Origin: Bugula neritina
Taxonomy: Eukaryota; Animalia; Bryozoa
Assembly: GCA_964035545.1 (NCBI GenBank)
Contig: OZ037772.1
Span: 10,786,818-10,850,817 of the forward strand
Reading direction: 5' to 3'
Length of the DNA: 64,000 nt
Shown here one piece after another: positions 477 to 55,019 of the stretch. Position 1 is the stretch's first letter. Each line of letters opens with the position of its first letter. The translations under genes and the position numbers were made by a program. The notes under the pieces were generated by a model that was not told the origin of the DNA, did not search any database, and was given only the letters and a program-made list of their open reading frames with translations.

Positions 477-3400
477 AACATATATATATAAACATATATA
501 TAAACATATATATAAACACACACACACACACATATAAAAACATATATAAACACATATAAACACACATAACCACGTATACACACGTATACACACGTATACA
601 CACATATACACACATATACACACATATACACACATATACACACATATATATACACACATATATATACACACATATATATACACACATATATATACACACA
701 TATGAGTCAGTTTACTTCATTTAGTACACACCAGCAACTTAAGACCTAACATTAAAGTTTGCTCAAAATCAATTGAAATTTATTTTACATGATATTTTTA
801 TGTGCTGGTTTTAACTACGCATAACAGAAAAGGCTGGGAGGGGATTCCCCAACATTAAAGCACAGGTCATTGTCATATGCACTTAACATTCTATATGTGC
901 GGACCGTTACGAAAAAACCGTAACGGCCCGTAACCAAAACGAGCTGAATAATTAGGGAAAACATTGGAAATGAAGCAAAATTAAAAAGAACGTTGATTGT
1001 TTAGGTGTATTTATTGGTGTTTTACTAGTTTTGGCCAAAAAACCATGTTCATTACCAGCTAAATTGTGAAAAATAGCCAAAAACTGAAGATATCCAGTGT
1101 GTACTAAATTAAGTAAAATGAGACATATATAATATATTATTTTTTTATTTATTTATTCATTTATTTTATATAGCTAATTTACCCAGAGACCAACTTATAG
1201 GACAAGGGGGCTTTGCAAAAGTCTACTGGATGAGGAATAGCGAAGGAGAAAAAATAGCAGTGAAAAAGATTGATATTGAAACTGTTAAAGATCCCAGTGA
1301 TTCTCAAGAACTGGATATGGTAAAATTTTCAATTTGAAATACTTACATTTTTTACGATATAATAAAATGTAATAGATATATAACAAAATATATACCATAT
1401 TATATAATATATGCTGTATATTATATAGATTATAGTACATAGATTATATTAAAATTAATATAATCTATGTATTGAAATGAACTTTTTTAGATATGTTTTA
1501 AAAAATACTCAGAAGGAGTACCAAACTGTATTGTTTCTATTTATATATGAGCATTTGAGCAATTTGTGAAAATCAATTTATTAGCTTCAACAATTATTTA
1601 AAATTTAAAGTTATAAATGCATTTCGCTAACAGGAAATGAAAAACATTCACAGAGAAGTGCAAGTGATGAGTCAGTTGAATCACAAGAGGATAGTAAAGT
1701 ACTTTGGGTCAGAGGTCATTGACTGTGAACTTTTCATCTACATGGAATATCTCCCTAGAGGTTCCATTAAGGATGAGCTTCGGAGGAGACAAGCCCAGTT
1801 TTGTGAGTTGGAGGCAAAGAACTACATGCGGCATCTTCTAGAAGGTTTGACCTACCTTCATGAGAAGAAGATTATACATCGAGATATCAAAGGTACGGCT
1901 TCGTTAATGAGTCACTTCTCATTAATTCAAGCTATGATCAACTTACTCATATTGAGTGTTTATGAATAAATTGTGCCTTTAATATGTCATAAAAGTTGTT
2001 GGCTTACAAATACAACTTCAATCATATTTTGTGTTACTTTGATTTGCAACTTTAGGCTGCAACTATTTCAGCGAGAATTATAGTCCAAGAATTGTTGGAA
2101 AGATTTAGTGGTTAGAGCACTGACCTTGTAATTAAATACAAGGTCGGTGGTTTGATCCTCAGTCAAACTTATTGGTGATATTAAGAAGAGCATTCAGTCA
2201 TAATCTATATTAAATTTAAAAAACCTATTGCTATCAGGGATTCTCACAAGGGTGGTGACTAAATAAACTCATGCGTGTTTTTTTTTTATTGAAAAGTTTA
2301 TTCACTCGTCTAAATATTATTTAGGTATAATCTCTTTCAAAATGCAGGTTCCAACATTTTACTTGATGAGGACGGAAATGCAAAGTTGGCAGATTTTGGC
2401 CTTTCAAAGCGAATACAAACTGTGAAAACTAAAAGCACGGGAAACACAACTTTTACTGGAACAGCTCATTGGATGGCTCCGGAGGTCATTGTGGGGAATA
2501 CCTACAGTTTCAGAGCTGACATCTGGTGAGCTTTTGTCTAGAAACAAATTATTAAATTCAAAATATAATATTGCTTTGAAAAATTGTAGAAGTTGTAAAA
2601 ACAATATAAAAAATAATTTACAACTAATTTATTTTATCTAAAAAGTACGTTCTACATTTAAAAAATGACTCAAAGGGAAAATGAGTGAAAATAAAGCGTT
2701 TTAAGTAAAATGTGTCACACGATGTGATTCAGAAAAAAGGTTATTGCAAATAAGCTTTTGTCATCAGTTGACAGTTATTAAATAAGAAAGAAATGGCACT
2801 CAGATTGGGTTGTAGATAAGCAAATTATTAAATTGAACTTTTGTTAAATTTTCTTAAAATTTATAGTTTTCTTTACAGTTGGTTTATTAAAATGAATTGT
2901 AAAAATTAGAAATAAGAATAATTATTCTTATTATTTTTGAAATAAAATATATTTGTGAACTGTGGTACAGTTCTCATGTAATTATTTACAGCATATATAT
3001 TAGTATATTATAGTGTAAAAAGTTCAAAATGTGTGATTTATAGACCCTTGTGAGAAATTCTTTTGCTGGAATTGAGTTCATTTCATTGCATGGCCAACTA
3101 AAAACTACTTAATTCTAGTTTTAGCTTTATTGAAGATTAACTAGCTCTATACAAATCAATTGCAGCACATAGAAAAGGAATTTATTGCAATATTTACAAT
3201 ATTTCGCTATAATACTAAACAAATAAATCTTTAATGTGACATGTATAAGTTCCGTAATAATCAAAGAAAAAGTGATGTGTTGTTTTAGGAGTGCTGGTGC
3301 GACAGCAGTAGAAATGCTGACCGGAAACCCACCATATGGCATGAGCTGGAGGTCTACCAAGCAATATTTAAAATAGGAACCACCAGGACTGCTAAATACC

Positions 3401-3519
3401 TGCTGCATCCAAATCCCAGCAGCCAACTTCTTGATTTCCTGGAGAAAACCTTTAAGCCAATGGAAGAAGATCGTCCAACAGCAGTTGAGCTTACTGCTCA
3501 CCCTTGGCTAAGTGGTTAA
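347..3519 (+). CDS. STE11/MEKK2-3-like MAP kinase kinase kinase, 3' part (5' end outside window); last exon carries a 2-nt frameshift
   Basis: GT-AG exons 347-382, 1174-1319, 1634-1892, 2348-2525, 3289-3519 join in phase. They give GQGGFAKVY, IAVKKI, HRDIKGSNILLD, DFGLSKRIQT, GTAHWMAPEVI and DIWSAGAT. The MEKK-type tail WHELEVYQAIFKIG...DRPTAVELTAHPWLSG* is in a different frame from 3337; as assembled the reading stops at TAG 3374-3376. Confidence 0.85.
415..702. repeat. Compound (CA)n/(TA)n microsatellite in kinase intron
   Basis: Runs of cacaca, tatata and cacatataca; this explains the CVY-type ORFs at 324-701. Confidence 0.95.
700..1129. mobile_element. Non-autonomous MITE-like element, ~430 bp, with ~32-bp terminal inverted repeats in a TA context
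   Basis: Left end atatgagtcagtttacttcatttagtacacac (700-731) matches the reverse complement of the right end gtgtgtactaaattaagtaaaatgagacatat (~1098-1129) with 4 mismatches. No ORF inside; internal hairpin ccgttacg-aaaaaac-cgtaacgg at ~904-926. Confidence 0.6.
2103..2290 (+). mobile_element. tRNA-derived SINE, diverged copy
   Basis: A-box-like tagtggttagagc, B-box-like ggtttgatcct, core attggtgatattaagaagagcattcagtcataat, tail ttctcacaagggtggtgacta...tttt; homologous to the copy at 6632-6842. Confidence 0.7.
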
Positions 3520-4397
3520 CATTTTAGACTTGTACTATGTATTTTATTATTTATTACTTTCATATGGTATAGATATCTATTCATTTAAAGTAAAATGTTG
3601 TTGAGGTTGCATATATTTTATGATTACAATGTCTTACCGTGAAGTAATTTTAGTTTATATCTAATATATGTAGGCTATTTTATTTTTCAACGTGTTTTTA
3701 TATGTTTCCTCATTTCTGTAAGCAAAATTTTATGATTGTTTATTTTACTAAAATATATGATTACCTTTACTTCAAACTTTTTACTTCCTTTATCAAATTT
3801 AACAAAATTTTTATGCTAATAAAAAGAAACAAATTGATTTTTGAACATTGTTATTTATTGGCATTCTCACATATATTATATAACACAATATAAAGAATAT
3901 ATAATATATATAGCTGAAACACACATATAATATAGATCATAATATGTATTTAACACAGATTTTCTATTACATCATTTACGTACAGAAACCAAACTGTTCA
4001 TTTTACTTTTAATTCAACTAACAGATAACAAACAAACTGGTAAATTAAGGATGAACAAATATCTAGCAACAAACAAAAATGCCATATTGTATTTTCAATG
4101 TAGAAGAGCAGAGTTGTCTGCACTACAATCACTGTACTAGGGTCATGTTTCAACAGTTCTTCAACTCAATAACTTTAGTCTACAAGAAAACAATATTCAA
4201 TGTTATTCAATACAAAATATAATACTTTGTATCTGCATATAAATTATTAATACATGGCAGCTGGTATTCGAAAACAGCAAATGCTGATTCTATATTTTAA
4301 AACACCTGAACTATGCAATACCTGTCGAAATAAACAGCTTAAAGAATACAGTTTAAAATCATAATACTACTCCATGTTTAAGGCATCTGCAACTTCA

Positions 4398-4510
4398 GTT
4401 TTTTTTAAGTGGGCTAAAGACTTGTGTCTAAATGGCACAGACCCTATTATGACTGAATTCCCTTCCTCAAATCACATAAGTCTGGCCGAGATTTGAACCC
4501 ATGACCTCGT
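4398..4510 (-). mobile_element. tRNA-derived SINE fragment
   Basis: On minus: gaggtcatgggttcaaatc (B box), ggaagggaattcagtcataat (core) and ttagcccactt, as in the 6632 copy. Confidence 0.6.
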
Positions 4511-4594: not shown

Positions 4595-4712
4595 CAAGGT
4601 CATGTAGGGTTTGAACTTTGACAAAGCCATTGGTGATATGAGGAAAGGCATTTAATTACTTCTGTGCCTTAAGACTATGTCACCATCGTTATGACTAGCA
4701 AAGTCTTTAGCC
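4595..4712 (+). mobile_element. tRNA-derived SINE fragment, inverted relative to 4398-4510
   Basis: aggtcatgtagggtttgaac...caaagccattggtgatatgaggaaaggcat...ttctgtgcct matches the 6632 copy. Confidence 0.6.
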
Positions 4713-4715
4713 TAA

Positions 4716-7700
4716 TTAAATTAAACTTTTAAAATGTGAATTCGTTAGTGGTACAGTTACCAAACCCACCCATCCTCCACTTGACTGAATCCAGGCATGG
4801 AAATGCTGATTCACAAACTCGGTTGCTATCTGGACAATGTCATAGAGTCTGCGGAGCTGGCAGTCTACTATTGGTTCTTTCAACTTACTCACTGCATGCG
4901 CAATGTCTGCAGTGAACACCAGTAGCTACAAGTACATCAACAGCTACAGGTACATAAACAACTACAAGTACAACAGCATTTACAGACACAACAGTATCTA
5001 CAGGTACACAAACAACTACGCGTATAGAAACAATTAGAGGTATATAAACAACTACAGGTAATTTACAGTATCTACAGGTACATCAATAACTACAAGTAGA
5101 AGTGTATAGTTATTTATTATATAATTATTATTATTAGCAATTATTGCAACAATCATTATTATAGCTAATTGTCATGTTATATAATATTTATTTCATCTGT
5201 ATAAATATTATATAACTTACAGATTTATTTATAATTAGCTAAATATTATATTGCATAACAACAAACACGACTTTTTCTTATATCAGAATGATATAATTAT
5301 ATTGTAGAGTAATTATTTTTATATTATTTAATGTTAATTTGCTGTTGAAGGTATTATTTATAATTTTGCTAATAGATATATTAGCCTATATATGGTATTT
5401 ACTTTCGCTAACTGTTATATTATATAACACCAAACAAAGATTTTTATTACATCACATAATATTATTATTATAGCTAGTTATTATATTGTTATTATATATT
5501 TATTTTTATAGTATTTGTAATATTTCAAATTACATGATAATTATTATAGTTTATTTTTTATCAAATTATAATATAATGAATGTACTATAGTTTATTATTG
5601 TAATATCATATTATATTATAATGTATTATAGCTTAATATTGTAATAATTATTATGTTGTACTATATAATGTATTATAGTTTAATATTTTAATATATTATG
5701 TAATATATTATAGCTTAATATTGTAATATCATATTATATTATATATTATAGTTTAACATTGTAATATCATATTAAAGATCGTGATAATATAATATCATGT
5801 ATTATGTTTACCATGATGATACGCTGCCAGGAGATGCCCTGCTGACCCCCAATCAGCCAGGAGTACATTACTTTATTGAACTTCATGCCTACGTGCTCTT
5901 TCGACTCCTCCACGTTCTTCATGCTGCACAACTCCATGTGGAATCTATCACAGAGCATTTGGTATTGGTCCTTTAATAAGTTCTTCAGTTCTTTACCTGA
6001 CAGTAAATATTAATACAGTTATACAGGGGTTAAAAACAGTAATATCGTAATTATACAGTAATGTCGTAATTTACACTAATTATACAGTAATACAGTTATA
6101 CAGTGTTACAGCGTTACAGTAATACAGTGATAGAGTAATAAGTGATATAACAGTAATATATATGCCTACATGCAACACTACACAACAATATATTGTTATA
6201 TTGAAGATGTAAATATTACTATTACTGTAATGTTATATTATTATACCTGGTCATTAGTGACTTGATATGCAATTATGTACTATAGTCACAGTTAGCAGTT
6301 GTAGTAATTAATATAGTCACAGTTATAACTATAACAGTTAGAATAACTAGACTGCAAATATAGTTATTATGGGCTTTGTAATTTTATCATGATAGCGGTA
6401 CAGCTAGCGTGAATAAATTATATTTGAAGAAAAATAAAATGTTGCAATACATTAACAGAACTTGAATACTTGCCAAGTTCGAGCATCACTTTGACTAGTT
6501 CTGTTTGACTGTAGTCACTCTCTACACCTTTTAGCATCTGCATGATTTTAGGCAGAGTAAAGCTCAAGGAACCTTCAGTACACACTTTATCTTTCAGACT
6601 GAAAAAATATCATTATAGCTTCAATATTCGTAGGGAGTAGCCGTGGTCTAGGGGTTGAAGCGTTTGCTTTGTGAACATGAAGTCATGGGTTCGAACCCAA
6701 CAAAGGCCATTGGTGATGTTAGGAAGAGCATCCAGTCATAATTGCTCCTGTGCCTCATTTAAATAAGCTCTTAGCCCACTTTAACAAAAACCCTCACAAT
6801 TTCTCACAGGGATGGTGACTATAAACTTGCGTGAGCTTTTTAGCTTTAAAATTCATCAATTGATATTTTTGCGTATTGTTTTTTAAATAAAGGTGCTCAA
6901 AATGAAATATGAATAAATTTATTTTAGTTACTGACCTTTCTCTCACGTAGGCAGAAATTACATCAAAGTTGACATGATTGAAACATCCTGGTTTTTCTTT
7001 TTGTTCAGGACTTTTGGTTTTTTTCTCCGGGGATTTATAGTCTGGAAAACGAACCAGCTTTACAATTCGTCTTGCCGCATTCGGGATATCAAACTCACAT
7101 TGCTTTACCAAATTTTTGCAGTTTGGTTTTAGGCCATTCTAAAACAAGTTTGATAAAAAAATATTATGTTAATGTTATTATTAGTCAATTACAATAAAAA
7201 ATATGAATCTTTTCACGTAAATTCTTGCATAACCTATCGATCACTATTGATCATAAGCATGTTATACTGAAATATAATGTGCCAGATAAAGCAATTAAAT
7301 TTTGTTTTAAATTTATTATTTTGAAGTTGTAATAAAATAAAGTTTTATAATATATAGAGCTATTTGCATTTGTTAAAATTTAGGTTCCATAGCATATTAC
7401 AATAGAAACAGGTTCTTTTTAGTATATAAAGCTATTTACATATAACACATCATTAGGCTTGGTCAATCAAAGTTAATTGTACATTATATTAAGTGAAATA
7501 ATTAACACTATAAATACCAATTACTAGAAAATAAATTGCAGAATAAAAGGCGTCTAAAAATCAACGTCTTTTGCTCTTTATAATTAAACTGACTTAATTT
7601 CAATAAAATGCGGCAATTAAACTTAAGTTGATTTGTCAAAGCTTCACTATAGTGATTATTGACAGAACAAGGTAAAAGCGCAAGCACATAGTAGTTGTCT

Positions 7701-9887
7701 TCTCTCAACAGTTGTCTAATGACTTACCCAGCCTCCTTGCTGTAGTAGAAAGTCACTTGCGTATTTATCAATGAAGTTGACACCTAGACTGACTAACTGC
7801 TGAATCTTATTCCCCACGTCACAGGGATCTCTTCTAATACTCTGTGTGACCATGGACAGCGTAAACGCCCACACCTACAGCAAACAGTTCAGCATATTGC
7901 ATTATATTACAGGATATTGCAGTATTTTGCTGTATATTACAGTTGACTACAGTAGTATATTACAGTAGTATATTACAGTTATTGATAACTTAAACAGTTT
8001 ATAAGGCTGTTGATTGAAAATTTTACCAGTTGTGATTAAAAGATATTACATTAAAAATAAAATCACAATAGAAATTATCTTATTCTTTATTGTTTTAATT
8101 TCTCAAAACTTTATAATGCATAACTTGATTTTGAGCACAATTATCAAATATATTTAATTTATGCAGTAATATTATATTGTTTAATATAGTTGAAGAGCGT
8201 GGATAGTTATGCATTATACTATTATTTCAAAGTATTCTCCCATTTGAAACACTTAATAATATTCACATCACATATCTTCTTTTATGTCAACTTATGAACA
8301 TATAAAGTACAAAACATATTATACAAAGTAGTACATATAGAACATTCTATTTGTTGGCAGTTCCACATAAACAGGAAATGACATACCACCAGCAATCTCT
8401 CCCATGTCATTGGATGGTCATCATCAATAAGCCACGCCCTTAGTATCTCGTTGAATACACTCGACACTACTGGTGGGTTAGAGTACTTGTCCGTAATGTA
8501 CTTGATTTGCTCTTTTAGTTCTGTTGTCACCTTTTCAACTGTTTTGGAGCATTTCTGCACAACGAAATTTACTGAAATAAACAGAAAAGTATTGTTAGTG
8601 TGTCATAATGCTTTAACTTTGGCTTAAAAGGACAACTTTCAACACTTAATGTAGACTGTGTTATGCTATTTCCCAAATTTCTAAAACAAGTCTATATCAA
8701 TATAGATGACCTACCAGTTTAATCTAATTTAATAGAGATTAATTATATGATACAAATGATTAATTATATGCATGACAGAATAGATGCAGCTTACAAAAGA
8801 ATTGAAGTTATTTTCAATAATTAGCAATATGTTTGTATAAAATGACGTAGGTATCAAACCACAATGCAATAATCATGCATAACCAATATTTATGAACTTC
8901 CAATTATAAATATAATCAAATTAGCATAATATAAATTGTCACTGAATAGTGGAAACAGTTTGAAGTATTAAACTACGTATAACTGCCATTCTAAATTATA
9001 ATCGGTTGAACAATTTTAAGCTCTCACCCACTTGTCCAATAGCCATCTGACCCGCATCCTGCTCTAAATCCTCCTTGTGCACTGGTAGTAGCTGGTCTAC
9101 CACTTTATCAGCTAGGGACTGAGTGCACTTCAAACTGCAAGTTAAGTGAAACTGATACGTGAACCAATAAAGCATGTTAAATGTATTTGAATGAACTGTA
9201 TATATGTAAAGTTGAAATAGAAATAGCTATATATAGAATGCTGGCTTATAAGTTATAGACGCTAGCTCATAGTATAAGTATTATAATAAGCTAAACAGAT
9301 ATTAAACCTTGCATAATATCTTACATCATTATAATTATGTAGTTTGACAGATCGAATATGCAATTTAAAATTAGCTAGTATAAAATGCTCAACTCATTGC
9401 TTTCAAACTTTGTCCATATAAATTAAATATTTTACATAATGCATTAATTTAGATTAAGCTAAATTTCTCATCACTAAAATAAGTAATAATTTTAATATTG
9501 GTCATTACTATTATTTCAAAAACAAGAGTTTTTTTTTTTCAAATATAAGCTCAGTTTTAGAAGCTGCACAATATATTATGTTTATATAATATATTATATG
9601 AATATAATATGATATTACTATAATTGTTCAGATATTATATTATATAGGTGAGATTATATATGTTCTAATATATATTATAATATATTATATATAGTATAAT
9701 TGTTTATCATATATATTTATGCATTATGTATGGCAATCTTCAGCTGAACAGTTGAACCGCATGTCAAACAAACAGGATATTAAGTTATAAAAGAAAGAAA
9801 TAAAACCCACTGTGTTCTAACGTATGCAGAGATTAGGTCATATGTACTCGGCTCCGAGGAGCAAGTAGGACTTTCCCGTCTTGGCAT
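4716..9887 (-). CDS. Tandem double Bcl-2-domain protein (>=395 aa; 412 aa if exon 8 reads through to the stop at 4716)
   Basis: Minus exons 9811-9887 (ATG), 9028-9134, 8387-8571, 7728-7874, 6936-7138, 6474-6598, 5812-5996 and 4770-4925 join in one open frame. Unit 1: BH4-like YDLISAYVRTHL, BH1-like MTWERLLVVWAF, BH2 DFLLQQGGWNGL. Unit 2: FDVISAYVRESL, BH3-like VMLELGKEL, GISWQRIIMLLVF, AWIQSSGGW. The 3' end after the second GGW is unresolved (read-through or a further exon). Confidence 0.85.
6632..6842 (+). mobile_element. tRNA-derived SINE, best-preserved copy (intron 5 of the Bcl-2-like gene)
   Basis: Pol III A box TGGTCTAGGGG (6644-6654), B box GGTTCGAACCC (6688-6698), core GGAAGAGCATCCAGTCATAATTG (6722-6744), tail ttctcacagggatggtgactataaacttgcgtgagc-tttt; six further homologous copies in this window. 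Confidence 0.8.
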
Positions 9888-11041: not shown

Positions 11042-14000
11042 ATGAGTGGGACAAACGTTGAGGCAGCAAAAAAGGAGAGTGCATCCTCACTCAAGAAGGC
11101 CAGTAACTCATCCGTCAATAAAAAAGAAAGCCAGGAGAAAGATCAAACTGATGCTGAAGCAAAGCCAGGATCTTCTAGTAATGTAGCACCTGGTACTCAA
11201 GGCGAAGCAGCAGCACCTGCAGCTGCTGAACCTGATACTAGTGGCCCACCGCCACTGCCAGAAGGATGGGAAGAAAAAACTAGTAGATCGACTGGTAAGT
11301 CTTAACTTTAATTGCTAGCAACAATGAAAAATAATTAGATACTAGATACAGTACTAGATATTCATAATCCTAAATCATAATGATAATAAATTTGAAGCGA
11401 TAATAAAAAAGTTTTTGTTTACTTATATTTTTGATTATGTTACGGTTATTATTGTTAAGTGGGTATTATTATTATATTTATAATTTAGTGTATTTTATTA
11501 CTGACTATATTGAGTGATTGTGTGTACATTAATGATAATTACAGTGGTCATCATATATTTGTAAATAATAACTGTAATTATAATCATAATGATGATCATA
11601 ATGATTATATTTATGGTGTTATACTTATAGTTATAATATAAAATAGCTGTTAAATTATAGAATCATTTATTGCTAAGGGGTTTCTGGTTAAATAGATGAG
11701 AATAAAATAAAATTTATATCTTGTAGTCATGTGATTGCATATAAGGGCTGACCAACCCTGGCAGTTTTAATAATTGAAGTCAAAGCAATCAAATACTTGA
11801 ATTGATTCAAGTGAATTTTACATGATTTGCAAATTTTTATTTGGCCAATATTTACAAATTTCCAGATAATTTTATATTTGTCTAAAATCTAAACCTATAA
11901 AATTTATTCAGTAGTTACATGCAAATCAAAGTTCAAATGAAACCAAAAAATTGCATGCATTTTGATTTATATTTATTTTTATATTTATATTAATCTAATG
12001 GACATTAATGAATAACAAAATTAATATCCATGACAAAAACAAAGCTTTCAAATAGCTAAATTACTATACAACCATTGAAATGAAAATTGATTTTTTTTCT
12101 AACAAAAAGTAAAGCTAACCTATAATGTCATTCATAATTAACTTGCTTTTGACTCAAAAATTAGTTGATATTTTAATCAAAAATGAAAATCATCAATTTT
12201 AATTTGTTGAAGTTTTAAAGAATTTTTAGCAAGCTAAATTTGGTCAATTAATTGAGCACATCACATCAATAATTACCAGTTATTCATGTCAATTTGACTG
12301 TAACTCAGGGAAGGCCTACTCAATGACATTCTAACTCTGTTATTTCCCGCCGATCGTTGATAGATTAAATTCACGTCTGCTACTGCTGCCACCAAATTGG
12401 CTCCTGTGATTTGCTCATACATATTTCATGCCTTGTGACTAAGCATCTCTGGCCCTCTATTATTACTTATTTATGCCCCTGGAGTATTCTAGAATGTTCT
12501 ATTTGGATACTGCACAAGTAAATTTAGGCAGCGAGTTTTCAACAAATTAATCAAATCTTTGAATGATGAAACTATGAAAGCGAAGTTAACCAACTTGATA
12601 GAAACTAACCCCTTCCCCCACCCAGTCACACAGTAATTTAACAATCCACCACTTGACTGCTGTAAGAAAAGTCTGACTATTGCTTGTATTGTGGTGCAAA
12701 TTCAACTCTTATTAAGATATTAGACAAAGCTTCTGTCATTGCAGAGTGCGTCACCAATTATTTTGGTCCATGCTGTAAAGTTAGTTTATTCTGGTTGTTA
12801 ACGATACACAGCCCCACAAGGAAGAACTCGCGTCTCGCGGCCTGCTAGGAGCTGCAGTTTTTTTAATATTAAAATCTTATCACCACATTTTGACATGACT
12901 GAAAATCCGCTATGCCGCTCTACTTGCTATTATTGCATTATTACCTCAGAAATTACCTGATTGTTACTATTTATCAATCAATACTCTACACCACACCATG
13001 TATTGTGTCGTAAATGGGAATTGTTTGCCCCAGTAACCATTATAATGGTCAATATTGATTGCAAACAAATCATCTATTCACTTGTAGTAACTGTAAATAC
13101 TAGCAGTATCTGTTGGGACTTCTTTCACATGAGCTAAGCTGATGTCTTTAACAACTGTATAAAATTGAGATATGGAGTTGTTCCCACGTTGAAATTCCGT
13201 AGGCTAGTATTTGCTGGTTTTTAGAAATCTTCCATGATGCTGTCATTACAGTAATAAGTGACCTTGACCTAGCTCAGTGTCTGTGAGTGATGATTCACTA
13301 GAGTCTGTCTGCACACACCTCAAATCTTCAATGTATTCATAGACTATTAGCATAAAGTAACTTTAATATTGTTTAAAATGAACCTCAAGTAATGCTGAAT
13401 AAAATGAATATCTAATTAAGAAATTAATATTTTTGTGACTGGCCACTGTATTTAATTATTCACAAAGCATAGGCTGTGGATTAAATGCTCTGATACAATT
13501 TACAGGGTGGTGTGTTGAGTACCCCCACCCTAAGCATTGTTTATAGTAGGTTCAGGCTGATACTGTCTCTCTTTCTGTTGTAGGTAAGCAGTACTATGTC
13601 AACACCTATACCAAGGAGAGCATGTGGGAGAGACCCACTGAGCCGGCTCAGCCGAGTTCTGAACAGGTACCCAGTTGTTGACCTATTTCTAGCTAGCATA
13701 CAAAGGGTGGAAGTTTGTTAGTTGATTTAACCTCACTGTAGCATCATTATGATATTTTCGGATCTTTCGAAGGAAAACATCATTTGCAACCTTCTATCGA
13801 GTCTAAATTTCTCTGTAGTCGTGCTTATTTCTAGTAAGAGTTGCATTCTCTTTGATTAGTTCCCATTTCACTAAGTAGGAGTGCATATAAAGACATTCAT
13901 ATAATAAGTATATGATTCAGTAGTTGAAGTTGTTTCCTCTTTTCTCCAGTTTTATCGTGTCTGATATTGGTAGGCATATTTTGATTACATGACACTATTT

Positions 14001-17000
14001 TCAGCTAAATCTACTATTAGTTCAATCTAAATGTGCAATCAGCCTTGTTAGTAGAATAACTAAGGTGTGAACAGTTTATGCTGAGCTGTTTAATCTCCCA
14101 GCATGCTTACCATGAGCTCAACTTGTCTGATTCTTGGTTGACATTGAGTTCTCGGGTAGCTGAATTTGATCTCATGTAACTTATGGATGTGTACTTCATG
14201 TTTTTCATTAAACTAAGCGCACATGCTTTAGATAGAATGGACCTCCCTAAGTTAATTTGTAGGCTTCTTGCTAAAAGTGTGACTTTTTTAAAAAAATAGT
14301 TGTGTTAAAATAGCGGCACTGCCCCAGGCGTTTTGTACATCAGTATGACAACTCTTGAAATATATAGGAAAACTAGTAAGGTCTTGATGGCAGCGCAACG
14401 TCAAATAATTACATCTTTCACCAGTAACAGGTAGGTAGGTTGCATTAGTTAGGGTTTCAGAAAGTTTGTGTTAGTTGAGGTTGGTCTGTTATTGCCACAA
14501 ACTAGAGTTTGTAAAAGAACTTAGAGCTTAAGCTTTATTCTCGTAAAGGTAAAGTCAATTGCATATCTGCTCCATTATTCACTGTTTAGCCTGTGGGGAG
14601 AATAAAAAAGGTAGACCCGCTGTATGGGCATGGCAATTTGTTGCGAGAGCCATCATAATGTTATAAGTTGGCTTTTGCTTAGCTGAGTGGTAGTTTTAGA
14701 TGGGTGGCTCGCTAGTTTGCTAGTAGTAAGTAGAACGGCACGTGAGTCTTTATGCGGTTTCGTTCAGCCAATGATATTAGAGCACTTGCACGTTTTGCGC
14801 TACATTTAATTGCTAACTATTATCATTCAATTTAGACAAAGCTAGTACAGTGACTGTGTCTAGTAATAGTAGTAGTAGTAAGCTTTGTTTAAACTGTAAG
14901 TTTAAAGACGATCTATTCAGTATGGCTCAGGTAAGTCTTATGGCTTAATGAAAATATAGGCTGCTTAAGATGTCTTGCTTTGAAATTGATAATTACTTGG
15001 TCTTGTGGTAGGTATAGCTTGTGCCACTGCTAGTCCTAGTGCTGCCTGCTAGTATCAAAATGAAAATTGATAATAAAATTATTTATTGTAAGTGTTACTG
15101 TTAGTGTAGGACTCGTACTCATAGTCATACTGATTTGACTGAATCAATCGAGCTCTGTCTTCAGTCATACTCATAGTATTTCATTATAACTATAAATATA
15201 AACTTGTATAACTACAAGTGATTGTTAGCATCGTTATCATTGTCATTGTGATTTTCAGCATCATTGATCATTGTGATTAATTACAATTAGTTATACTATT
15301 GGGTAGATTTGCAATTTTATCAGCAAGATGGATGTCAAACTGCACTAGTTTTAAGTTGACAATTATCTTCTCAGTACAAAGTGATCATAACAAGATATCT
15401 CTAAGTTTGAAATTGGTCTCCGCTAAATTAATTGCTCAACGTTCCTAGAGAACATTGCATCAGGAATCTACTTTTATTTAATCATAATTCGGATATAGTC
15501 TGTGTTAGCATTTATCTTGTACAAAGCTGTTCCCTTTGCGATTGCTTAGGTTTCTTAGATTAGCTCCAATCTTTTAGCTCTTCTACTACAATGTTTGTTA
15601 AAAATGGTTGGAACCAACCAAGTTTGGTTTGTTTCCTGTGTGATGGATTGTAAAAAGCCAATATTTAATTATAGGTGAACTTTTAAGCCTGTATGATAAC
15701 TCTATTACTATTAGTAGACATTTTCAGTCGTTATCCATTTCAATTTTGCTTCCTTAAATTATGAGAATTATGAATTTGATTAGACTCAATGCCCATAACT
15801 AAAGTCTAACTATTTCCTACTTGTACAGGTGCAATGTTCACATCTGCTAGTTAAGCATGCTGGTAGCAGAAGACCATCCAGTTGGAGGGAGGAGAAGATT
15901 ACTAGAACTAAGGAAGAGGCCATAGAACTGCTGCAATGTACGTCTGCTATACTTACATAACCTATTGTAGTATATGCTCACTTACTCTCTAGTTAAAATG
16001 TCTGTAGAACACAAAGCTATAGGATAAATTTAAAAAATTCTCACTTTGAAAACAGCAATTTAATAACGCCTTTACTTTCTTGAGAGTTTATTTCATGTCA
16101 AGACTGAAAAAATGAGTGTTTTTTTAACCTGGGGCTTTATTTCCATAAAACATGATGTATGCTTTTGTACTATGCTTATCATTTGAGTTTTGGCTATATT
16201 TATTATCTGGTTATGCTGGGTTTTCTCAACTCTAAAGATGGAAGAGGGAGGGTGGCCTGTTAGACACCCTTTAAGCTCTCTGTGGTGTTTCTGGTTTGTC
16301 AACCTCTAGCTGAGTACTATACTTGTATAACTTGTATACTCTGTACTTATATACTTATATACTCTGTGCTTGTATACTCTGTACTGTATACTCGATGCTT
16401 GTATACTTTATACTCTATACTTATAGCATATAGAAAACAAATACAAGAAGGAACCGAGACATTTGAAGCTCTGGCCTCCAAGTTCAGTGACTGCTCCTCA
16501 GCCAAGAGAGGTGGTGACCTTGGCCCATTTGGTAAAGGTCAAATGCAGCGCGCCTTTGAGACTGCTGCCTTTGCCCTGGAGGTTAGTTGAGCAGCTGCTA
16601 TTTTTAGTCAGTAGCAGTTCTCTTGTTTTTTGTAGGCACTTGACTTGAGTCAGAGTTTTGGTTCAGTGTCAAGGTGAAACTCTCGATAGCAATTTCAATT
16701 TGCCAATTTACTAGGATTTCATTGCCGAAAAAAACAAATTTTCAGTGCTTCATGCAAATTACTAAGAAATTTTGCTTTTGAGATTGTCAACTTGCCTGTA
16801 ACTCGCTATGGGGCTAGGTTTAAATATTTGTAATGTAGCATGTGTCCTATATTCTTTTTTATTATTTATATGCCCACAATTTTAGTAAAATAACATGTAA
16901 AAAAACTTTGGGTTTATGAAGGTTTTAAATTTCAGCTTTTGATGTAGTGTTTTCATAAATCAGTTCAATGCAATGGATATTTTTTGCCAATGCAGCAGTT

Positions 17001-20900: not shown

Positions 20901-23900
20901 GACAGAAACTGTACAAAAACCAACCTGTTGAATTTAACTTGTTAACTAATTTTGCTAACTAAGACTCATCTGTAGACAGGTTTACTAACTATGAACTGTT
21001 AAACTGCTGAGTTATTCTATTAGCTATAATCAATTATAAGTCATAGTAGATAGCCCAATTGAATGAGACTACCACAGTGCTAACTACTTGCTTATTTACT
21101 ATAAGTCGGTTAAATTACTGAGTCCAACTATTGACTAATTAATACTGAGTTAGTCTACTAACTATGACTAGGTTAACCCACTACTATGACTGAGTCAACC
21201 TACTACTAAAACTGAAATAAATACTAACTATTGCTGAGTAAAACTACCAGCTATAACTGAATTATACTGCTAATTAGGACTGAGTTAAACTATTAACTAT
21301 AAATGAGTTAAACTACTAACAGTAACTACAAATGAGTTGTACTACTAAGTGTACTAACTATGACTGAGTTAACTAACCAAGACTAAGTTGACTGCCACTC
21401 CCACCCTCTGATCTCTTAAGGATCCCCTGCCTTGGTTTGTCCCTCCCCTCCTCTACGCCAGACTCTGTGTTCTTATCTTCTGACACCATAAAGGGATTCA
21501 CGGAGAGTAGGTGAGAAGATGGCGACTTTTGGAGAGGAAGCGAAGATGACGTCATGAACGGGTTGACAGACAACAGAGCCTCTGATTGGCTAGAGGAAAT
21601 GAGGTCACCTGACTTGGACTTAGTTGCATCATTTGAGAAAGATATCTTCTTCACTGTTTTAGTTTTACTTCTATGGTAATCTAAACAACAAGTATTAGAT
21701 GTCAATGAAAGCAGAATTGCAAAGTTTGTGTGTCTATAGAAGGTGATTCAAATCATGTTACAGACTGGCATTGGCTAGTAGTTTATGTTATCAACTTACC
21801 AGAGAGATATTTTACTCCACTGGAGGTTGGCAGGTCATCTTCTGAGTCATCACTTTCCTCTGTAAACAAAAACAAATTAATTTATCCATCATGTGTTTCA
21901 TGATATTTTGCAAATTAGTGGAATTATCTTCACACATGGGGTTGATGAGAATAATCGCTATAATTTAAATACAAGTTGTTTTCTACTGCCTATTCTAGCT
22001 AGAAAGATGACAATTACTGCTATTGTTGGCAAAAGTTCAAGAATTTAGGCTAGCAGTGAATAAGACCAATACATTAGCAAAACTTTTAACAAACAATCCT
22101 TAGGCTACAAATTATTTATACACTTCTCTGGTAATAGCCAAGGAAAAATACAACTTAAGGTTAGAAATGGTGACAAACTGCAATTACGGATATACAGATT
22201 TCAGTAAAATATTGCAATTCTTCTAAATTCAAATGCAAGGCTGCATGCAGTACATATGACAGTTATGCAATACCCGGTTTAAGGGTGGATGACGTGTCAA
22301 ACACATTGATGTCTTCGTCTTCATCTCCTAAACTTTCTTCACTGTCACTGAGCTCTTGAGTAGAGGTCTCTGGCCCTTTTGTTGGCTCATTGGGTGTCTG
22401 TAGGTATAATTATAAAATCTATGTCCTCTTTCAGCACTCGTTTAGCAAAGTTGATCAGAGTACAAAGTTACGTCATTACTACAGATTGTTCTCCGTAAGA
22501 CTATGAGACAGCTTTGTTTGAGTTTATTTCCAATAATAAATAATTTTGAATATTAGAAGCATCATAAGCATTTTCGCATGATTCCAATCATGTGTAATGA
22601 ATTTACTTGAGTTGTAAGAGAAGACAACTACTTTATTATAAACAAAAAAGTATTAAGATTGAAAAGTTTGGTTGTAGATGAAATCCAACTTAACACTCTC
22701 ATATTGAGCAGCGTAAATTACTTATAGTAATACATATTAGCATGCATATATTACTACATAGCACTATATCTATTATAATACAACATAATATTATAATGTA
22801 TATTTGAGTATATATTAAATATATTGCTAAATATTATACATATTACGATATCCTAAACTCACAGAATTAGACGCTTTCTCTCCTGTAAAACCCTGACTGT
22901 AGCGAGAGTCCATAAGAGTTACATGTTTAGCTTGAACTGTTCCAGTGAACTGGGAGTTATGTTCCCGCTGATTATACAAGTCTGGTTTAGAGGAGCTAGC
23001 TGATTGGCTTACGGTACCAGTTGTCACATTTGATTGGTCAGAAGGACTAGCATTGTTATAAGTCGTTTGCTGTCTGTATAAGTTATTACTGGTCGGGACA
23101 GAATGTAGTTTTTGATTGACTGCCTGAGAAGGAATATGCTGCCGCTGTCGCTTGAACTTGAGGTCAATGCTATCATCAAGGTCATCCGATGACCCTTCGC
23201 CGGGTTCTCTAGTCACAAGACCAACATCAGGAGGAGATTTTGGGGAAGAGTGGCTGTACATTACATCTAGAGAAAAGAATAAAACCAACTTAAAATGTTT
23301 TATTCTATGCACTTCAATCTTAGCTAAAAACTCACGCAAGTTTATAGTCACTATCCCTGCTAGAAAACCCCTAATGGAAAAAGTTCGTATGTTAAAGTAG
23401 GCTAAGGACTTATTCAGATGTGACACAGGAGCAATTATGACTGGATGCTCTTCCTAACATCACCAATGGCCTTTGTCGGGTTTCAAACCCATGACTTGTA
23501 CACACTACTTTAAGCTTAGCTAAACTCAGGCTGATTTCCTATGTATTTGACAGAAGGCATATAAACATGAATATTTTTATGTGTTAATTTCAGAGTGGAG
23601 TTGAGCTGAGCTAATATTTTTGAGGCAGCACACCACGTCTAGAAAACTGTGTTTTGCCATCATATACTATCGGAATCTCTTTCCCACAAAATACAAACAT
23701 GTAAACTTTCCCACAAAAATATGTATATAAAATAAAAACAATTTTATACTATAATTAAAATATATAACATGTGATACACACCGAATTCATGAACGGAATA
23801 TGGTTCATTTCTTATCGAAAGAGTTTTAGGATGTTCTGTCTGTTTGTCCTCGCCGCCAGATGAATGGAGGATGGCTTCCATTTTCTCAGATATTGAATTC

Positions 23901-44574: not shown

Positions 44575-44765
44575 TAAGATTATAGTCGATATCCCCGTGA
44601 GAACCCCGATAGAAAAGTTATTTTCAAAGCAGCCTAAATATTTATTCATGTGAGGCAAAGAAGCAAACGTGACTGGATGCTCTTCCTAACATCAGACCTG
44701 GTGCTCGAACTCGAACCACTGACCTCATGCTTACTAGGTCAGCCGGCTATAACCCCCACACCACT
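44575..44765 (-). mobile_element. tRNA-derived SINE copy just upstream of the putative AJM1 5'UTR exon
   Basis: gactggatgctcttcctaacatca core, tcgaacc (B box on minus) and tail ttatagtc...ccccgtgagaa. Confidence 0.75.
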
Positions 44766-45424: not shown

Positions 45425-47474
45425 CTAGAATATCGAGAGCTTCTTACGACCCTCCCTCTGTCCCTTGTGTCTATGCAGTTCTCGGTATGATTTAGTCAGA
45501 GTTTCTAAATATTTCTCAGCCTTAGTCAACTTTTCAGTGAGATGTTTGACGCCCCCCGCATCACGTCTGCTCACATTGATCTCTAGACGCTGTTTTATAG
45601 ATATGATTTCCTTCTCTACACGGGACAACTCCTCTTCGGTTTTCATAACCTGTGAGACAATCGCATTACATAATAATATATATAAATAGTATAATATGTA
45701 CATAGTATAATATATACACACAGTACAATATAGTACAATAAATAATATAAATAATAAATATTATCAATTTTACAAACAACCACTTTATATTGAATGTTGA
45801 ACGAGTTACAAATAAAAATATTACATTAAAAATGCCCCAACCAGTTTTAAATACCTTATAAAAGCATTACCGTTGAAATAAATTATTCTAAGGAATATTT
45901 TCATTACAATAATATGTAAATGATTTTTTTCTAGGGCTAAACTTGGATGAGTGAGAGAGGTCATGACCTGTCCCAATAAATACTAGTTGCTTGGGCAGAA
46001 CTCTGGTATCAGATTCTTTTGAGTTAGTCAAGGGAAAGCGACTGATAAATTTCATACAGGTTAGTAATATGATGTCATACCTGTATATTAATACTCTTAT
46101 CTGACTTCTTAGACAGCTGGTGTTTAGATATAACGGAGGGAGCTGATTTACCCGGCGTAGTCTGCTTGCGGTATGATGTCATATCCACTATAATAGAGGC
46201 CAAACACGGGAGATTAAAACCAAAATGAGATCCACAAAACCAAATACCACTTGAGCTTTTAAATACTACATACAAAGTTAAGTAATAGATAATATTTAAG
46301 TTAAAGCAACTCCTTATGTAAAAAACCAAATGCTACTCAACTGAATTAGCCAGATATAAACTTGCTTTGTTTAAAGATAAGTTGTATTAACGTATTTAAG
46401 CTTTCAAATACTGACCTAGCTTTTGCTTTCAACCACTCTGATAAAACTAGTAGTGATATAACTAGTGATTGGCATTGCGATAGCACTAGCTATTATCATT
46501 GTGATTCATTAGTGATTGTCATTTACTGTACAGATGCAAGCCAAACAGATTGCTAACATAAAGCTGTTTCTGTACCTTTTCTGCCGTGACCTAGCGATTT
46601 GTTGAGATACGTGAACAAATCCGCTGACTTGGCACGACTCCCAGATGCTGCCTTTAGTTTATGTTTCTCTTTCTTCTTCAGCACGTCAAACATGTCTTTG
46701 TTTCCAGTCCTTCTCTTCAACTCCATTATCCTGTCGAGTGACTTCCCTGGAATAATGGCGGAGAAAGATATCACATGATCTCACCCGTAAAAGGATGTGA
46801 GAGATGTTAAGATGTCATTTCCTGGTAATGAAGTATAGATTCGATAAAAAAGTACTACTTTATGTAAATAAAAACTTGGGTTGGTTTATAGTCTCTATCC
46901 TTGTGAGAACTCCTGGTAGGAAGGATTTTTTGAGCTAAAGACAGTTTTATAGTGGCACGGTAACAATTATGACTGGATGCTCTTCCTAACATCACCAATG
47001 ACCTTTACTGGGGTTCAAACCCATGACTTTGTGTTTACTAAGCCAGTGCTGCAACTCCTAAACCACAGCTGTTTACTAATGCTGTTTTATGTTAATAGGG
47101 AATAGATTTATTTAAAAGTATAACTAAAAATATTTTTAAAAGATTGATGACATTTGGGAGAAAATAGACTGAGAGTCTATACCTGGAGGTAGCTTCAAGA
47201 TTGGCACAGGCTCAACACGCCCCTGAGAATCTTTGCCTAAACCTTCACCAGGTTTATATCCCATTAGAGCCATCAGTTTTGAACCAACACCCTGCAAATA
47301 CAGAACGAAATTAGGTCAAAGTTTAGATTAAATAACAACAAGAGAAGACAATTCAGAAATTATATGCATATAAATAAAGTGCATAACAGGAAACAGGTCT
47401 GTAGTTAAGTTTTAATGTGACAATTTCCAATAATAGAACAATTTATTTTTTATATATATATATACATATATATA

Positions 47475-54008: not shown

Positions 54009-55019
54009 ATGACCAAAAGTAAAAAAATAGAATCTCAGCCAGTGAACTCTGAATCAAAACGACTTGAAGATGGGCAGGCGGATAATAGGGGTAGCAACAT
54101 CGATATCAGTAGTAACCATGAGGAAAGATGTGCCACATGCAATGAGACAGATTGCACTCTCCAAGGGAGGAACAACAGGCAAATCAAGGTTCTCACTAAG
54201 TGGATTACCTGTGATCTCTGCAACCAATGGTACCATGGAATATGCCAGGACCTGCAGCCAGCTGATGTATCGTGCATAACTAAGTTGGCAGAGAAAGGCG
54301 TGAGCTGGAAGTGCAGTGACTGCAGAGATAAAACAGAAAACAGCCTACATGTAGAGAGTCTAACACAGCCCATGACTCAAAAAACAACACAGCAGATTGA
54401 CAACATAGAGAGGATAGTGAAGGTAATTGCTGAACAAAGCCATAAATTGAGTGAGATGGAACAGAAGTGGTCCGATGTCGTCAAGCAAAATCTTGAGAAC
54501 ATTGACAAGAATAAACAGATTGCGGCGGATGCAAAAACATTGATAGAAAAGAGTCACCAACTGAGGGAAGAAGAAAGTAGGAAGAGCAACGCTATCGTTA
54601 CCGGGGTCACTGAGAAAGATGGTAAAACAGCAATGGAGCAGGTACAAGAACTAATGAGAATGGAATGTTTTACCAAAACCAACTCACCAACTCAGGCTTT
54701 TAGGCTAGGAAAAAAAACAGAAAATGATGTACAAAAACGTCCAATCAAGGTGAGATTTGAGGATGAGCAATCAAAATGGGAGTTCGTTAAAAGGTTCAAC
54801 AATCAAATACTGAGAGAACAAGGTATTTACTGCAGACTTGATGAAAGCAAAGAAATCCGAAATCAACAATTCCAGCTGAGAAAGGAAGTTAACAGGCTTA
54901 GAGAGGAAAATACATCTATAGCATATCGAGTGAGAGACATGCATATACAAGAAAAGCAAGCCTCGGGGGAATGGAAAATAATGAAACAAGTCCAGCAAAA
55001 GAGAGTGACGGAATGCTGA
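54009..55019 (+). CDS. LINE ORF1 protein (PHD finger, coiled coil, RRM-like/L1-type C-terminal region), 336 aa
   Basis: CATC...WITCDLCNQWYHGIC...WKCSDC is a C4HC3 PHD finger; RKSNAIVTGV...FRLGK...RPIKVRF is typical of CR1/L2 ORF1. Confidence 0.92.
   Translation: MTKSKKIESQPVNSESKRLEDGQADNRGSNIDISSNHEERCATCNETDCTLQGRNNRQIKVLTKWITCDLCNQWYHGICQDLQPADVSCITKLAEKGVSWKCSDCRDKTENSLHVESLTQPMTQKTTQQIDNIERIVKVIAEQSHKLSEMEQKWSDVVKQNLENIDKNKQIAADAKTLIEKSHQLREEESRKSNAIVTGVTEKDGKTAMEQVQELMRMECFTKTNSPTQAFRLGKKTENDVQKRPIKVRFEDEQSKWEFVKRFNNQILREQGIYCRLDESKEIRNQQFQLRKEVNRLREENTSIAYRVRDMHIQEKQASGEWKIMKQVQQKRVTEC

What the first reader, a model, noticed from the sequence alone, without database searches (positions are those of the whole stretch)
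4716..9887. One protein containing two complete Bcl-2 folds in tandem
Seen: eight exons splice into one frame, and exons 1-4 and 5-8 are paralogous. The BH4-like motifs (DLISAYVRTH|LK and DVISAYVRES|LK) are each split by a phase-2 intron. The following introns repeat as phase 1 then 0 in both halves, the two BH3-to-BH1 exons are both exactly 185 nt, and both units end in GGW followed by GT. Exon 5 runs from GGW|NGL through a linker into the second BH4 with no stop. Known: canonical Bcl-2 proteins have a single such fold and act by dimerising between molecules. Inference: an old internal duplication made a covalently linked pseudo-heterodimer that could be self-inhibited, released by cleavage or phosphorylation, or act as a scaffold. 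I do not know of a characterised example but cannot search to confirm novelty.
Basis: partly seen in the sequence, partly recalled or inferred. Interest (0 to 1): 0.9.

Follow-up and report, generated by a model that had tools for sequence, protein, structure and literature searches.

The report
Bryozoan protein with two Bcl-2 domains
A conserved gene of the moss animal Bugula appears to encode one protein with two divergent copies of the Bcl-2 cell-death domain and no evident membrane anchor; I found no description of this arrangement, but RNA proof of the joining splice and a structure are still missing.

Summary
Eight minus-strand exons (9887-4716, one GC-AG intron) splice into a 412-aa frame with two paralogous halves (22% identical, E 3e-13; same 2-1-0 intron phases). 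A Bcl-2 profile gives two non-overlapping hits, weak for unit 1. Orthologous contigs from Bugula neritina metagenomes cover exons 2-8: all 13 covered splice sites are kept, and there are 48 synonymous versus 7 amino-acid changes (dN/dS 0.03). The 57-aa Met-free linker is under selection only in the fused frame (8:2, P 9e-5), and no conserved restart or termination signal lies between the halves. One gene is therefore very likely (about 88%), but no RNA run was found and the whole protein could not be folded. Best reading: an anchor-less, groove-degenerate, Bok/Bax-type-derived single-chain dimer acting as a regulator or adaptor. No description was found in the papers searched. Earlier unchecked notes report many divergent Bcl-2-fold genes in this genome, one cluster also tandem-duplicated.

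The parts
9811..9887 (-). Exon 1: start codon and BH4/alpha1 of unit 1, split by a phase-2 intron
   Evidence: not covered by orthologue contigs
9028..9134 (-). Exon 2: end of alpha1, loop and start of alpha2 of unit 1; phase-1 intron follows
   Evidence: orthologue has 3 nucleotide differences, no amino-acid change, both splice sites kept
8387..8571 (-). Exon 3 (185 nt): alpha2-alpha4 and BH1 (TWER) of unit 1
   Evidence: 4 heterozygous SNPs, all synonymous
7728..7874 (-). Exon 4: alpha5, alpha6 and BH2 ending GGW of unit 1
   Evidence: Pfam Bcl-2 57-100, E 1.8e-4; orthologue 10 synonymous, 0 amino-acid changes
7139..7727 (-). Intron 4 (589 nt), the junction between the two units
   Evidence: donor and acceptor conserved; read-through, poly(A) hexamer and ATG mini-exons not conserved
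6936..7138 (-). Exon 5: post-GGW helix, basic amphipathic helix (aa 190-203), Lys-rich spacer with two Ser-Pro motifs, then BH4 of unit 2; no Met
   Evidence: linker 8 synonymous and 2 amino-acid changes, only in the fused frame
6474..6598 (-). Exon 6: loop and first half of unit-2 BH3; GC donor inside the BH3 Gly codon
   Evidence: GC donor conserved in the orthologue
5812..5996 (-). Exon 7 (185 nt): rest of BH3, alpha3, alpha4 and BH1 (SWQR) of unit 2
   Evidence: orthologue has 1 amino-acid change
4716..4925 (-). Exon 8: alpha5, alpha6, BH2 (GGW at 4770) of unit 2 and a 17-aa non-transmembrane read-through tail; the GT after GGW may instead be a donor to an unfound exon 9
   Evidence: Pfam Bcl-2 E 2.6e-4; TIGR00865 E 8.7e-6; Bcl-2 chains in PDB E 3e-4; tail hydropathy 0.76 versus 1.96 for the Bcl-2 anchor

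Best explanation
One expressed gene of a Bugula bryozoan encodes a 412-aa protein of two divergent Bcl-2-fold units. It most likely arose when two tandem copies of a multi-exon Bok/Bax-type gene fused: exon 5 joins what looks like the old last exon of copy A (after GGW) to the old first exon of copy B, whose start codon is gone. Shown: frame, splice sites, paralogy, strong purifying selection on both units and on the linker. Inferred: both units fold as Bcl-2 bundles and pack as a built-in dimer; the protein is cytosolic or bound to membranes only through the basic amphipathic linker helix; since both BH3-binding grooves are degenerate, it acts through surfaces outside the groove, as a regulator, decoy or adaptor for the animal's other divergent Bcl-2-fold proteins or for signalling partners, as dimeric poxvirus Bcl-2-fold proteins do. 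The linker Ser-Pro sites may tune it. Probability of one gene about 0.88; of this mechanism about 0.4.
For: Frame and phases. Two Bcl-2 profile hits. Orthologue: 13 of 13 covered splice sites kept, dN/dS 0.032 overall, 0.013 unit 1, 0.037 unit 2, 0.054 linker. 7 of 7 listed heterozygous exonic SNPs synonymous, no exonic indel listed. BH1 Gly lost in both units; the same loss in Trichoplax Bcl-2L4 is considered to make a functional groove unlikely (PMC8998228). GGW exon boundary, many exons and a split BH3 match the Bok/Bax/Bak gene type (PMC8998228). Groove-independent and dimeric Bcl-2-fold modulators are known (N1, A52, B14, GIV66; PMC7022251).
Against: No RNA read or transcript shows the exon 4-5 splice. 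No model of either whole unit; the exon-8 fragment model is low-confidence (pLDDT 56) with no significant fold match. Unit 1 is only a weak profile hit. No partner is identified. The C-terminus is unresolved, so an anchor exon is possible. No tree against Bok/Bax/Bak could be built.
Confidence: 0.4

Rival explanations
1. Same fused gene, but the product is a Bok/Bax-like effector with its first dimer pre-assembled. It opens on membranes through alpha5/alpha6 and is targeted by the basic linker helix or by an unfound tail exon.
For: Bok/Bax-type exon layout with a split BH3; both alpha5 helices keep hydrophobicity similar to Bcl-2 (0.98 and 1.44 versus 1.13); amphipathic linker helix; GT after the second GGW.
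Against: BH3-in-groove dimer determinants are lost in both units; no transmembrane tail in the read-through ending; no convincing exon 9 downstream.
Confidence: 0.25
2. One reading: one unit restrains the other inside the chain and is released by linker cleavage or phosphorylation.
For: Asymmetric units (unit 2 more canonical, unit 1 more derived); two conserved Ser-Pro motifs in a Lys-rich linker; a hydrophobic-x-x-hydrophobic-x-Asp motif is shared by both units one helix later and both keep the BH1 Arg, so a shifted-register salt bridge is conceivable.
Against: No NWGR Gly, no BH3 Asp in the preferred register, no DxxD site in the linker.
Confidence: 0.2
3. Two separate neighbouring genes or transcripts (exons 1-4 and a second unit with its own start); the fusion is only apparent or a minor product.
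For: No RNA evidence; this genome is reported to hold tandem arrays of single-domain Bcl-2-fold genes (unchecked notes); an AATAAA lies in intron 4 of the window.
Against: The linker has no Met and is under selection only in the fused frame; no conserved ATG mini-exon in intron 4; the AATAAA is absent from the orthologue; read-through after the first GGW is 3 aa in the window and 45 aa in the orthologue; exon-4 donor and exon-5 acceptor are conserved.
Confidence: 0.1
4. A pseudogene, an assembly artefact or a chance splice model.
For: No annotated full-length protein was found.
Against: An independent DNA run covers the whole region; orthologous contigs show the same exon order; dN/dS 0.03, P 5e-26; exon GC 38-50% versus intron GC 19-36%.
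Confidence: 0.02

Closest known systems
Multi-motif Bcl-2 family, Bok/Bax/Bak gene type (Pfam PF00452)
   Same: BH4-BH3-BH1-BH2 order in each unit; intron after BH2 GGW; many coding exons; BH3 split by an intron as in mammalian Bok (PMC8998228).
   Different: Two units in one chain; BH1 Gly and BH3 Asp lost; no tail anchor found; far below the Pfam gathering score exon by exon.
Trichoplax Bcl-2L4 (non-canonical Bcl-2 with BH1 SWRR)
   Same: BH1 lacks the NWGR Gly; the groove is thought non-functional (PMC8998228).
   Different: Single domain; keeps a BH3 motif.
Dimeric viral Bcl-2-fold proteins (vaccinia N1, A52, B14; grouper iridovirus GIV66)
   Same: Functional analogy: a pair of Bcl-2 folds, and action outside the canonical groove or with an occluded groove (PMC7022251).
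   Different: Non-covalent homodimers of viral origin; no sequence relationship shown here.
Database models with a repeated Bcl-2 stretch (camel KAB1256356.1)
   Same: Two PF00452 stretches in one predicted protein.
   Different: The repeat is identical and partial, probably an assembly or annotation artefact; here the units are 22% identical, full-length and each under selection.

Membership tests
Multi-motif Bcl-2 family | Sequence similarity to the Bcl-2 domain in each unit | tested here: met
   Pfam hits on exons 4 and 8; profile hits aa 99-176 (weak) and 333-401; TIGR00865 and PDB hits for unit 2
Multi-motif Bcl-2 family | BH motifs in the order BH4, BH3, BH1, BH2 | tested here: met
   BH4 at aa 16/230, BH1 at 116/336, BH2 GGW at 170-172/393-395; BH3 clear only in unit 2
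Multi-motif Bcl-2 family | Helical bundle around a hydrophobic alpha5 | tested here: inconclusive
   Amphipathic helix patterns fit; only a 69-aa fragment could be folded, pLDDT 56, Bcl-2 hit at E 8.4
Multi-motif Bcl-2 family | Exon boundary at BH2 GGW | tested here: met
   Unit 1 GGW|GT conserved in the orthologue; unit 2 has GT after GGW, use unknown
Multi-motif Bcl-2 family | One Bcl-2 domain per chain | tested here: not met
   Two non-overlapping units in one frame
Multi-motif Bcl-2 family | C-terminal transmembrane anchor | tested here: inconclusive
   None in the read-through tail or linker; an exon 9 is not excluded
Pro-survival Bcl-2/Bcl-xL/Mcl-1 | Intact BH1 NWGR groove motif | tested here: not met
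   TWER and SWQR
Pro-survival Bcl-2/Bcl-xL/Mcl-1 | Two coding exons, BH3-BH1-BH2 on one exon | tested here: not met
   Four exons per unit (PMC8998228)
Bok/Bax/Bak effectors | 4-6 exons; BH3 split by an intron (Bok) | tested here: met
   Phase-1 intron in the Gly codon of unit-2 BH3
Bok/Bax/Bak effectors | BH3 with conserved Leu and Asp | tested here: not met
   MLELGKEL in unit 2; IGQVVNFV or CSKTVEKV in unit 1; register inferred from a weak ungapped score
Bok/Bax/Bak effectors | Phylogenetic grouping with Bok, Bax or Bak | not tested
   Only vertebrate Bcl-2 sequences were obtained
Bok/Bax/Bak effectors | Membrane permeabilisation | not testable with these tools
   Needs an assay

The most novel reading that the evidence does not exclude
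Bugula has evolved a class of natural single-chain Bcl-2 dimers whose two degenerate units form a regulated functional pair. They control or execute cell death without BH3-in-groove binding or a tail anchor, inside a greatly expanded bryozoan Bcl-2-fold family.
Probability: 0.3. Interest if true: 0.8.

Novelty: new variant of a known kind. Interest (0 to 1): 0.6.

Why it matters
Bcl-2 proteins are described as single-domain proteins that act by pairing between molecules. A natural, strongly conserved two-domain chain would fix one pairing geometry in a single soluble protein, which could be solved and tested for groove-independent interfaces. It also points to an unstudied, divergent Bcl-2-fold repertoire in bryozoans. 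The importance is limited until the splice, the fold and an activity are shown.

Tried and rejected
The spliced 412-aa protein has no reference, so I did not send it to any search or folding tool; it was analysed only in local scripts, and exons were searched apart. The one RNA-run search used the 5.9-kb genomic stretch and found only a DNA run. That query was about 79% non-exonic and the orthologue is 93-97% identical in exons, so a miss is expected and says nothing about expression; an exon-only query would have been better. An exact exon 4-5 junction pattern found nothing in JGI contigs. Exon 8 found no further loci in metagenome or prokaryotic genome contigs, and the exon 4/8 alignment none in viral contigs. 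The 1.84-billion-protein search with a 53-position profile returned only a Bugula exon fragment, a camel Bcl-2 model and two repeat artefacts; it was too weak to find distant relatives, so the range of the family is unknown. Exon 5 found no homologue of 63-200 aa. The Atlas was busy four times and uninformative once. The fragment fold was not usable. No third Bcl-2 unit or second gene lies in the window. Exon-9 candidates (acceptors at 4179 and 4117, the latter giving a hydrophobic 39-aa frame) have no support. No human contig was fetched; a published human Bcl-2 construct protein (P0007) served only as an alignment reference.

Full report
Observation. Splicing eight minus-strand exons (9887-9811, 9134-9028, 8571-8387, 7874-7728, 7138-6936, 6598-6474, 5996-5812, 4925-4716) gives an uninterrupted 412-aa frame with intron phases 2,1,0,0,2,1,0. 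All acceptors are AG; intron 6 has a GC donor. Exons are 38-50% GC and introns 19-36%. Residues 1-172 and 173-412 align at 22% identity (E 3e-13; z 21 against 2000 shuffles). One detail is weaker than it looks: the two 185-nt exons align best with two offsetting 11-residue gaps.

Bcl-2 identity. Exons 4 and 8 each match the last 45 positions of Pfam Bcl-2 at E about 2e-4, below the curated cut-off. Exon 8 also matches TIGR00865 and solved Bcl-2 chains. On the spliced protein, run locally, a vertebrate Bcl-2 profile gives two non-overlapping hits, aa 99-176 (6.9 bits) and aa 333-401 (26.9 bits). Unit 2 is the more canonical. Predicted helices are amphipathic and both alpha5 segments are hydrophobic. 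The fold itself is not shown: only a 69-aa fragment could be modelled, at low confidence.

Organism and orthologue. Protein searches with exon alignments found read-through gene calls on short contigs. Their records are named after AY690838, an accession cited in the Bugula neritina mitochondrial genome paper (that it is that genome's accession is my recollection). The window is therefore most likely from a Bugula, about 85-90% identical in introns to those contigs. Contigs L006, L008 and L009 cover exons 2-4, L001-L005 exons 4-5, and L007 exons 6 to mid-8. No single contig spans exon 5 to exon 6; L001 and L007 abut in intron 5. All 13 covered splice sites are kept, including the GC donor. Over 344 codons there are 48 synonymous and 7 amino-acid differences (dN/dS 0.032, P 5e-26); unit 1 gives 0.013 and unit 2 gives 0.037. 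In the one public run that holds the stretch, a DNA run, all 7 listed exonic variants are synonymous and no listed indel is exonic (31 variants were not shown).

One gene or two. The deciding region is exon 5. Its first 57 codons precede the second BH4, contain no Met, and show 8 synonymous against 2 amino-acid changes (dN/dS 0.054, P 9e-5); the other two frames have stops and a 1:9 ratio. Both halves of the linker show the signal. The exon-4 donor and exon-5 acceptor are conserved. What a two-gene model needs is not conserved: read-through after the first GGW is 3 aa here and 45 aa in the orthologue, the single AATAAA in intron 4 is absent there, and no ATG mini-exon is shared. I put one gene at about 88%. 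Direct RNA evidence is lacking, for reasons of search sensitivity as much as biology.

Origin (inference). In Bcl-2-family genes the exon after GGW carries the last helix and the tail (PMC8998228). Exon 5 starts like such an exon and ends with a segment that aligns to the N-terminus of unit 1. This fits fusion of the last exon of one tandem copy to the first exon of the next. Four exons per unit and an intron inside BH3 resemble the Bok/Bax/Bak gene type, not the two-exon pro-survival type. No tree was possible.

Mechanism. The canonical interaction uses the BH3 Asp and the BH1 Arg in a groove that needs the NWGR Gly (PMC7022251; PMC8998228). Here BH1 is TWER and SWQR. In the register that best fits Bcl-2, unit-2 BH3 is MLELGKEL and unit-1 BH3 has neither Gly nor Asp; that register rests on a weak score, and both units share an Asp one helix later. 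The read-through tail is not a membrane anchor (0.76 versus 1.96), and no convincing ninth exon was found, though the GT after GGW is the same hexamer as the exon-1 donor. The linker has a basic amphipathic helix (aa 190-203), two Ser-Pro motifs unchanged in the orthologue, and no DxxD. I therefore favour an anchor-less, groove-independent, built-in dimer acting as regulator or adaptor (0.4), ahead of a pre-assembled Bok-like effector (0.25) and an auto-inhibited switch (0.2). The very low dN/dS argues for a stable role, not an arms race. All functional steps are inferred.

Context. The gene lies head-to-head with a Pin1-type rotamase gene (start codons about 1.15 kb apart) and tail-to-tail with a protein kinase gene. 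No other Bcl-2-like gene is in the window. Unchecked notes from this scan list many divergent, anchor-less Bcl-2-fold genes elsewhere in the genome, one cluster also tandem-duplicated. I could not test these.

Novelty. Three phrase searches for tandem or double Bcl-2 domains found no relevant paper, nor did term look-ups in five reviews or surveys of the family, nor searches on bryozoan Bcl-2. The library lacks most subscription papers, and I could not query domain-architecture databases, where uncharacterised or mis-annotated two-domain models may exist. Verdict: a real, conserved gene; a new architectural variant of the Bcl-2 family; interest 0.6.

Noticed in passing
window 11042-16590 (+): Pin1-type gene (WW-like start, Rotamase PF00639 hit) head-to-head with the tandem Bcl-2 gene, start codons about 1.15 kb apart; a shared promoter is possible. 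The Bcl-2 linker has two Ser-Pro motifs, the kind Pin1 binds, but nothing links them beyond position.
   Followed up: partly
window about 1200-3515 (+): Last exons of a protein kinase gene (PF00069), tail-to-tail with the Bcl-2 gene.
   Followed up: partly
window 6630-6840, also 23326-23497, 46884-47070, 44576-44694, 4399-4475, 4621-4669: Very high-copy short interspersed repeat (summed contig depth above 700,000 in run X1; six copies or pieces in the window); no Rfam match.
   Followed up: partly
window 54009-57742 (+): Apparently intact LINE-type retrotransposon: a 336-aa ORF1 with a Cys/His-rich stretch overlapping a 923-aa endonuclease plus reverse transcriptase ORF.
   Followed up: partly
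L007 about 814 and 1058: In the orthologue, the exon-7 acceptor and first bases of exon 7 are duplicated and degenerate inside the repeats of intron 6.
   Followed up: no
L002 versus L008 (sample 3300003318): Two versions of the locus in one sample, 96.7% identical, with 8 differences in exon 4 and the same exon-4 protein: divergent alleles, mixed colonies or a recent duplicate.
   Followed up: partly
L001, exon 5: A 6-nt in-frame duplication not present in L002-L004; probably an assembly artefact.
   Followed up: partly
window introns 3, 6 and 7, just upstream of the acceptors at 7874, 5996 and 4925: Short ACTGT-like tandem repeats that vary in length between the window and the orthologue and run close to weak, purine-rich acceptors.
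   Followed up: no
window about 20600-45700 (-): Several long low-complexity ORFs (347, 582, 449 aa) with no Pfam match, probably large exons of one or more big genes; one has a repeated His/Gln/Pro-rich unit.
   Followed up: no
P0004 (camel KAB1256356.1): Annotated Bcl-2 model with an identical internal repeat of BH1-BH2; probably an artefact, and a caution when counting two-domain Bcl-2 entries in databases.
   Followed up: partly
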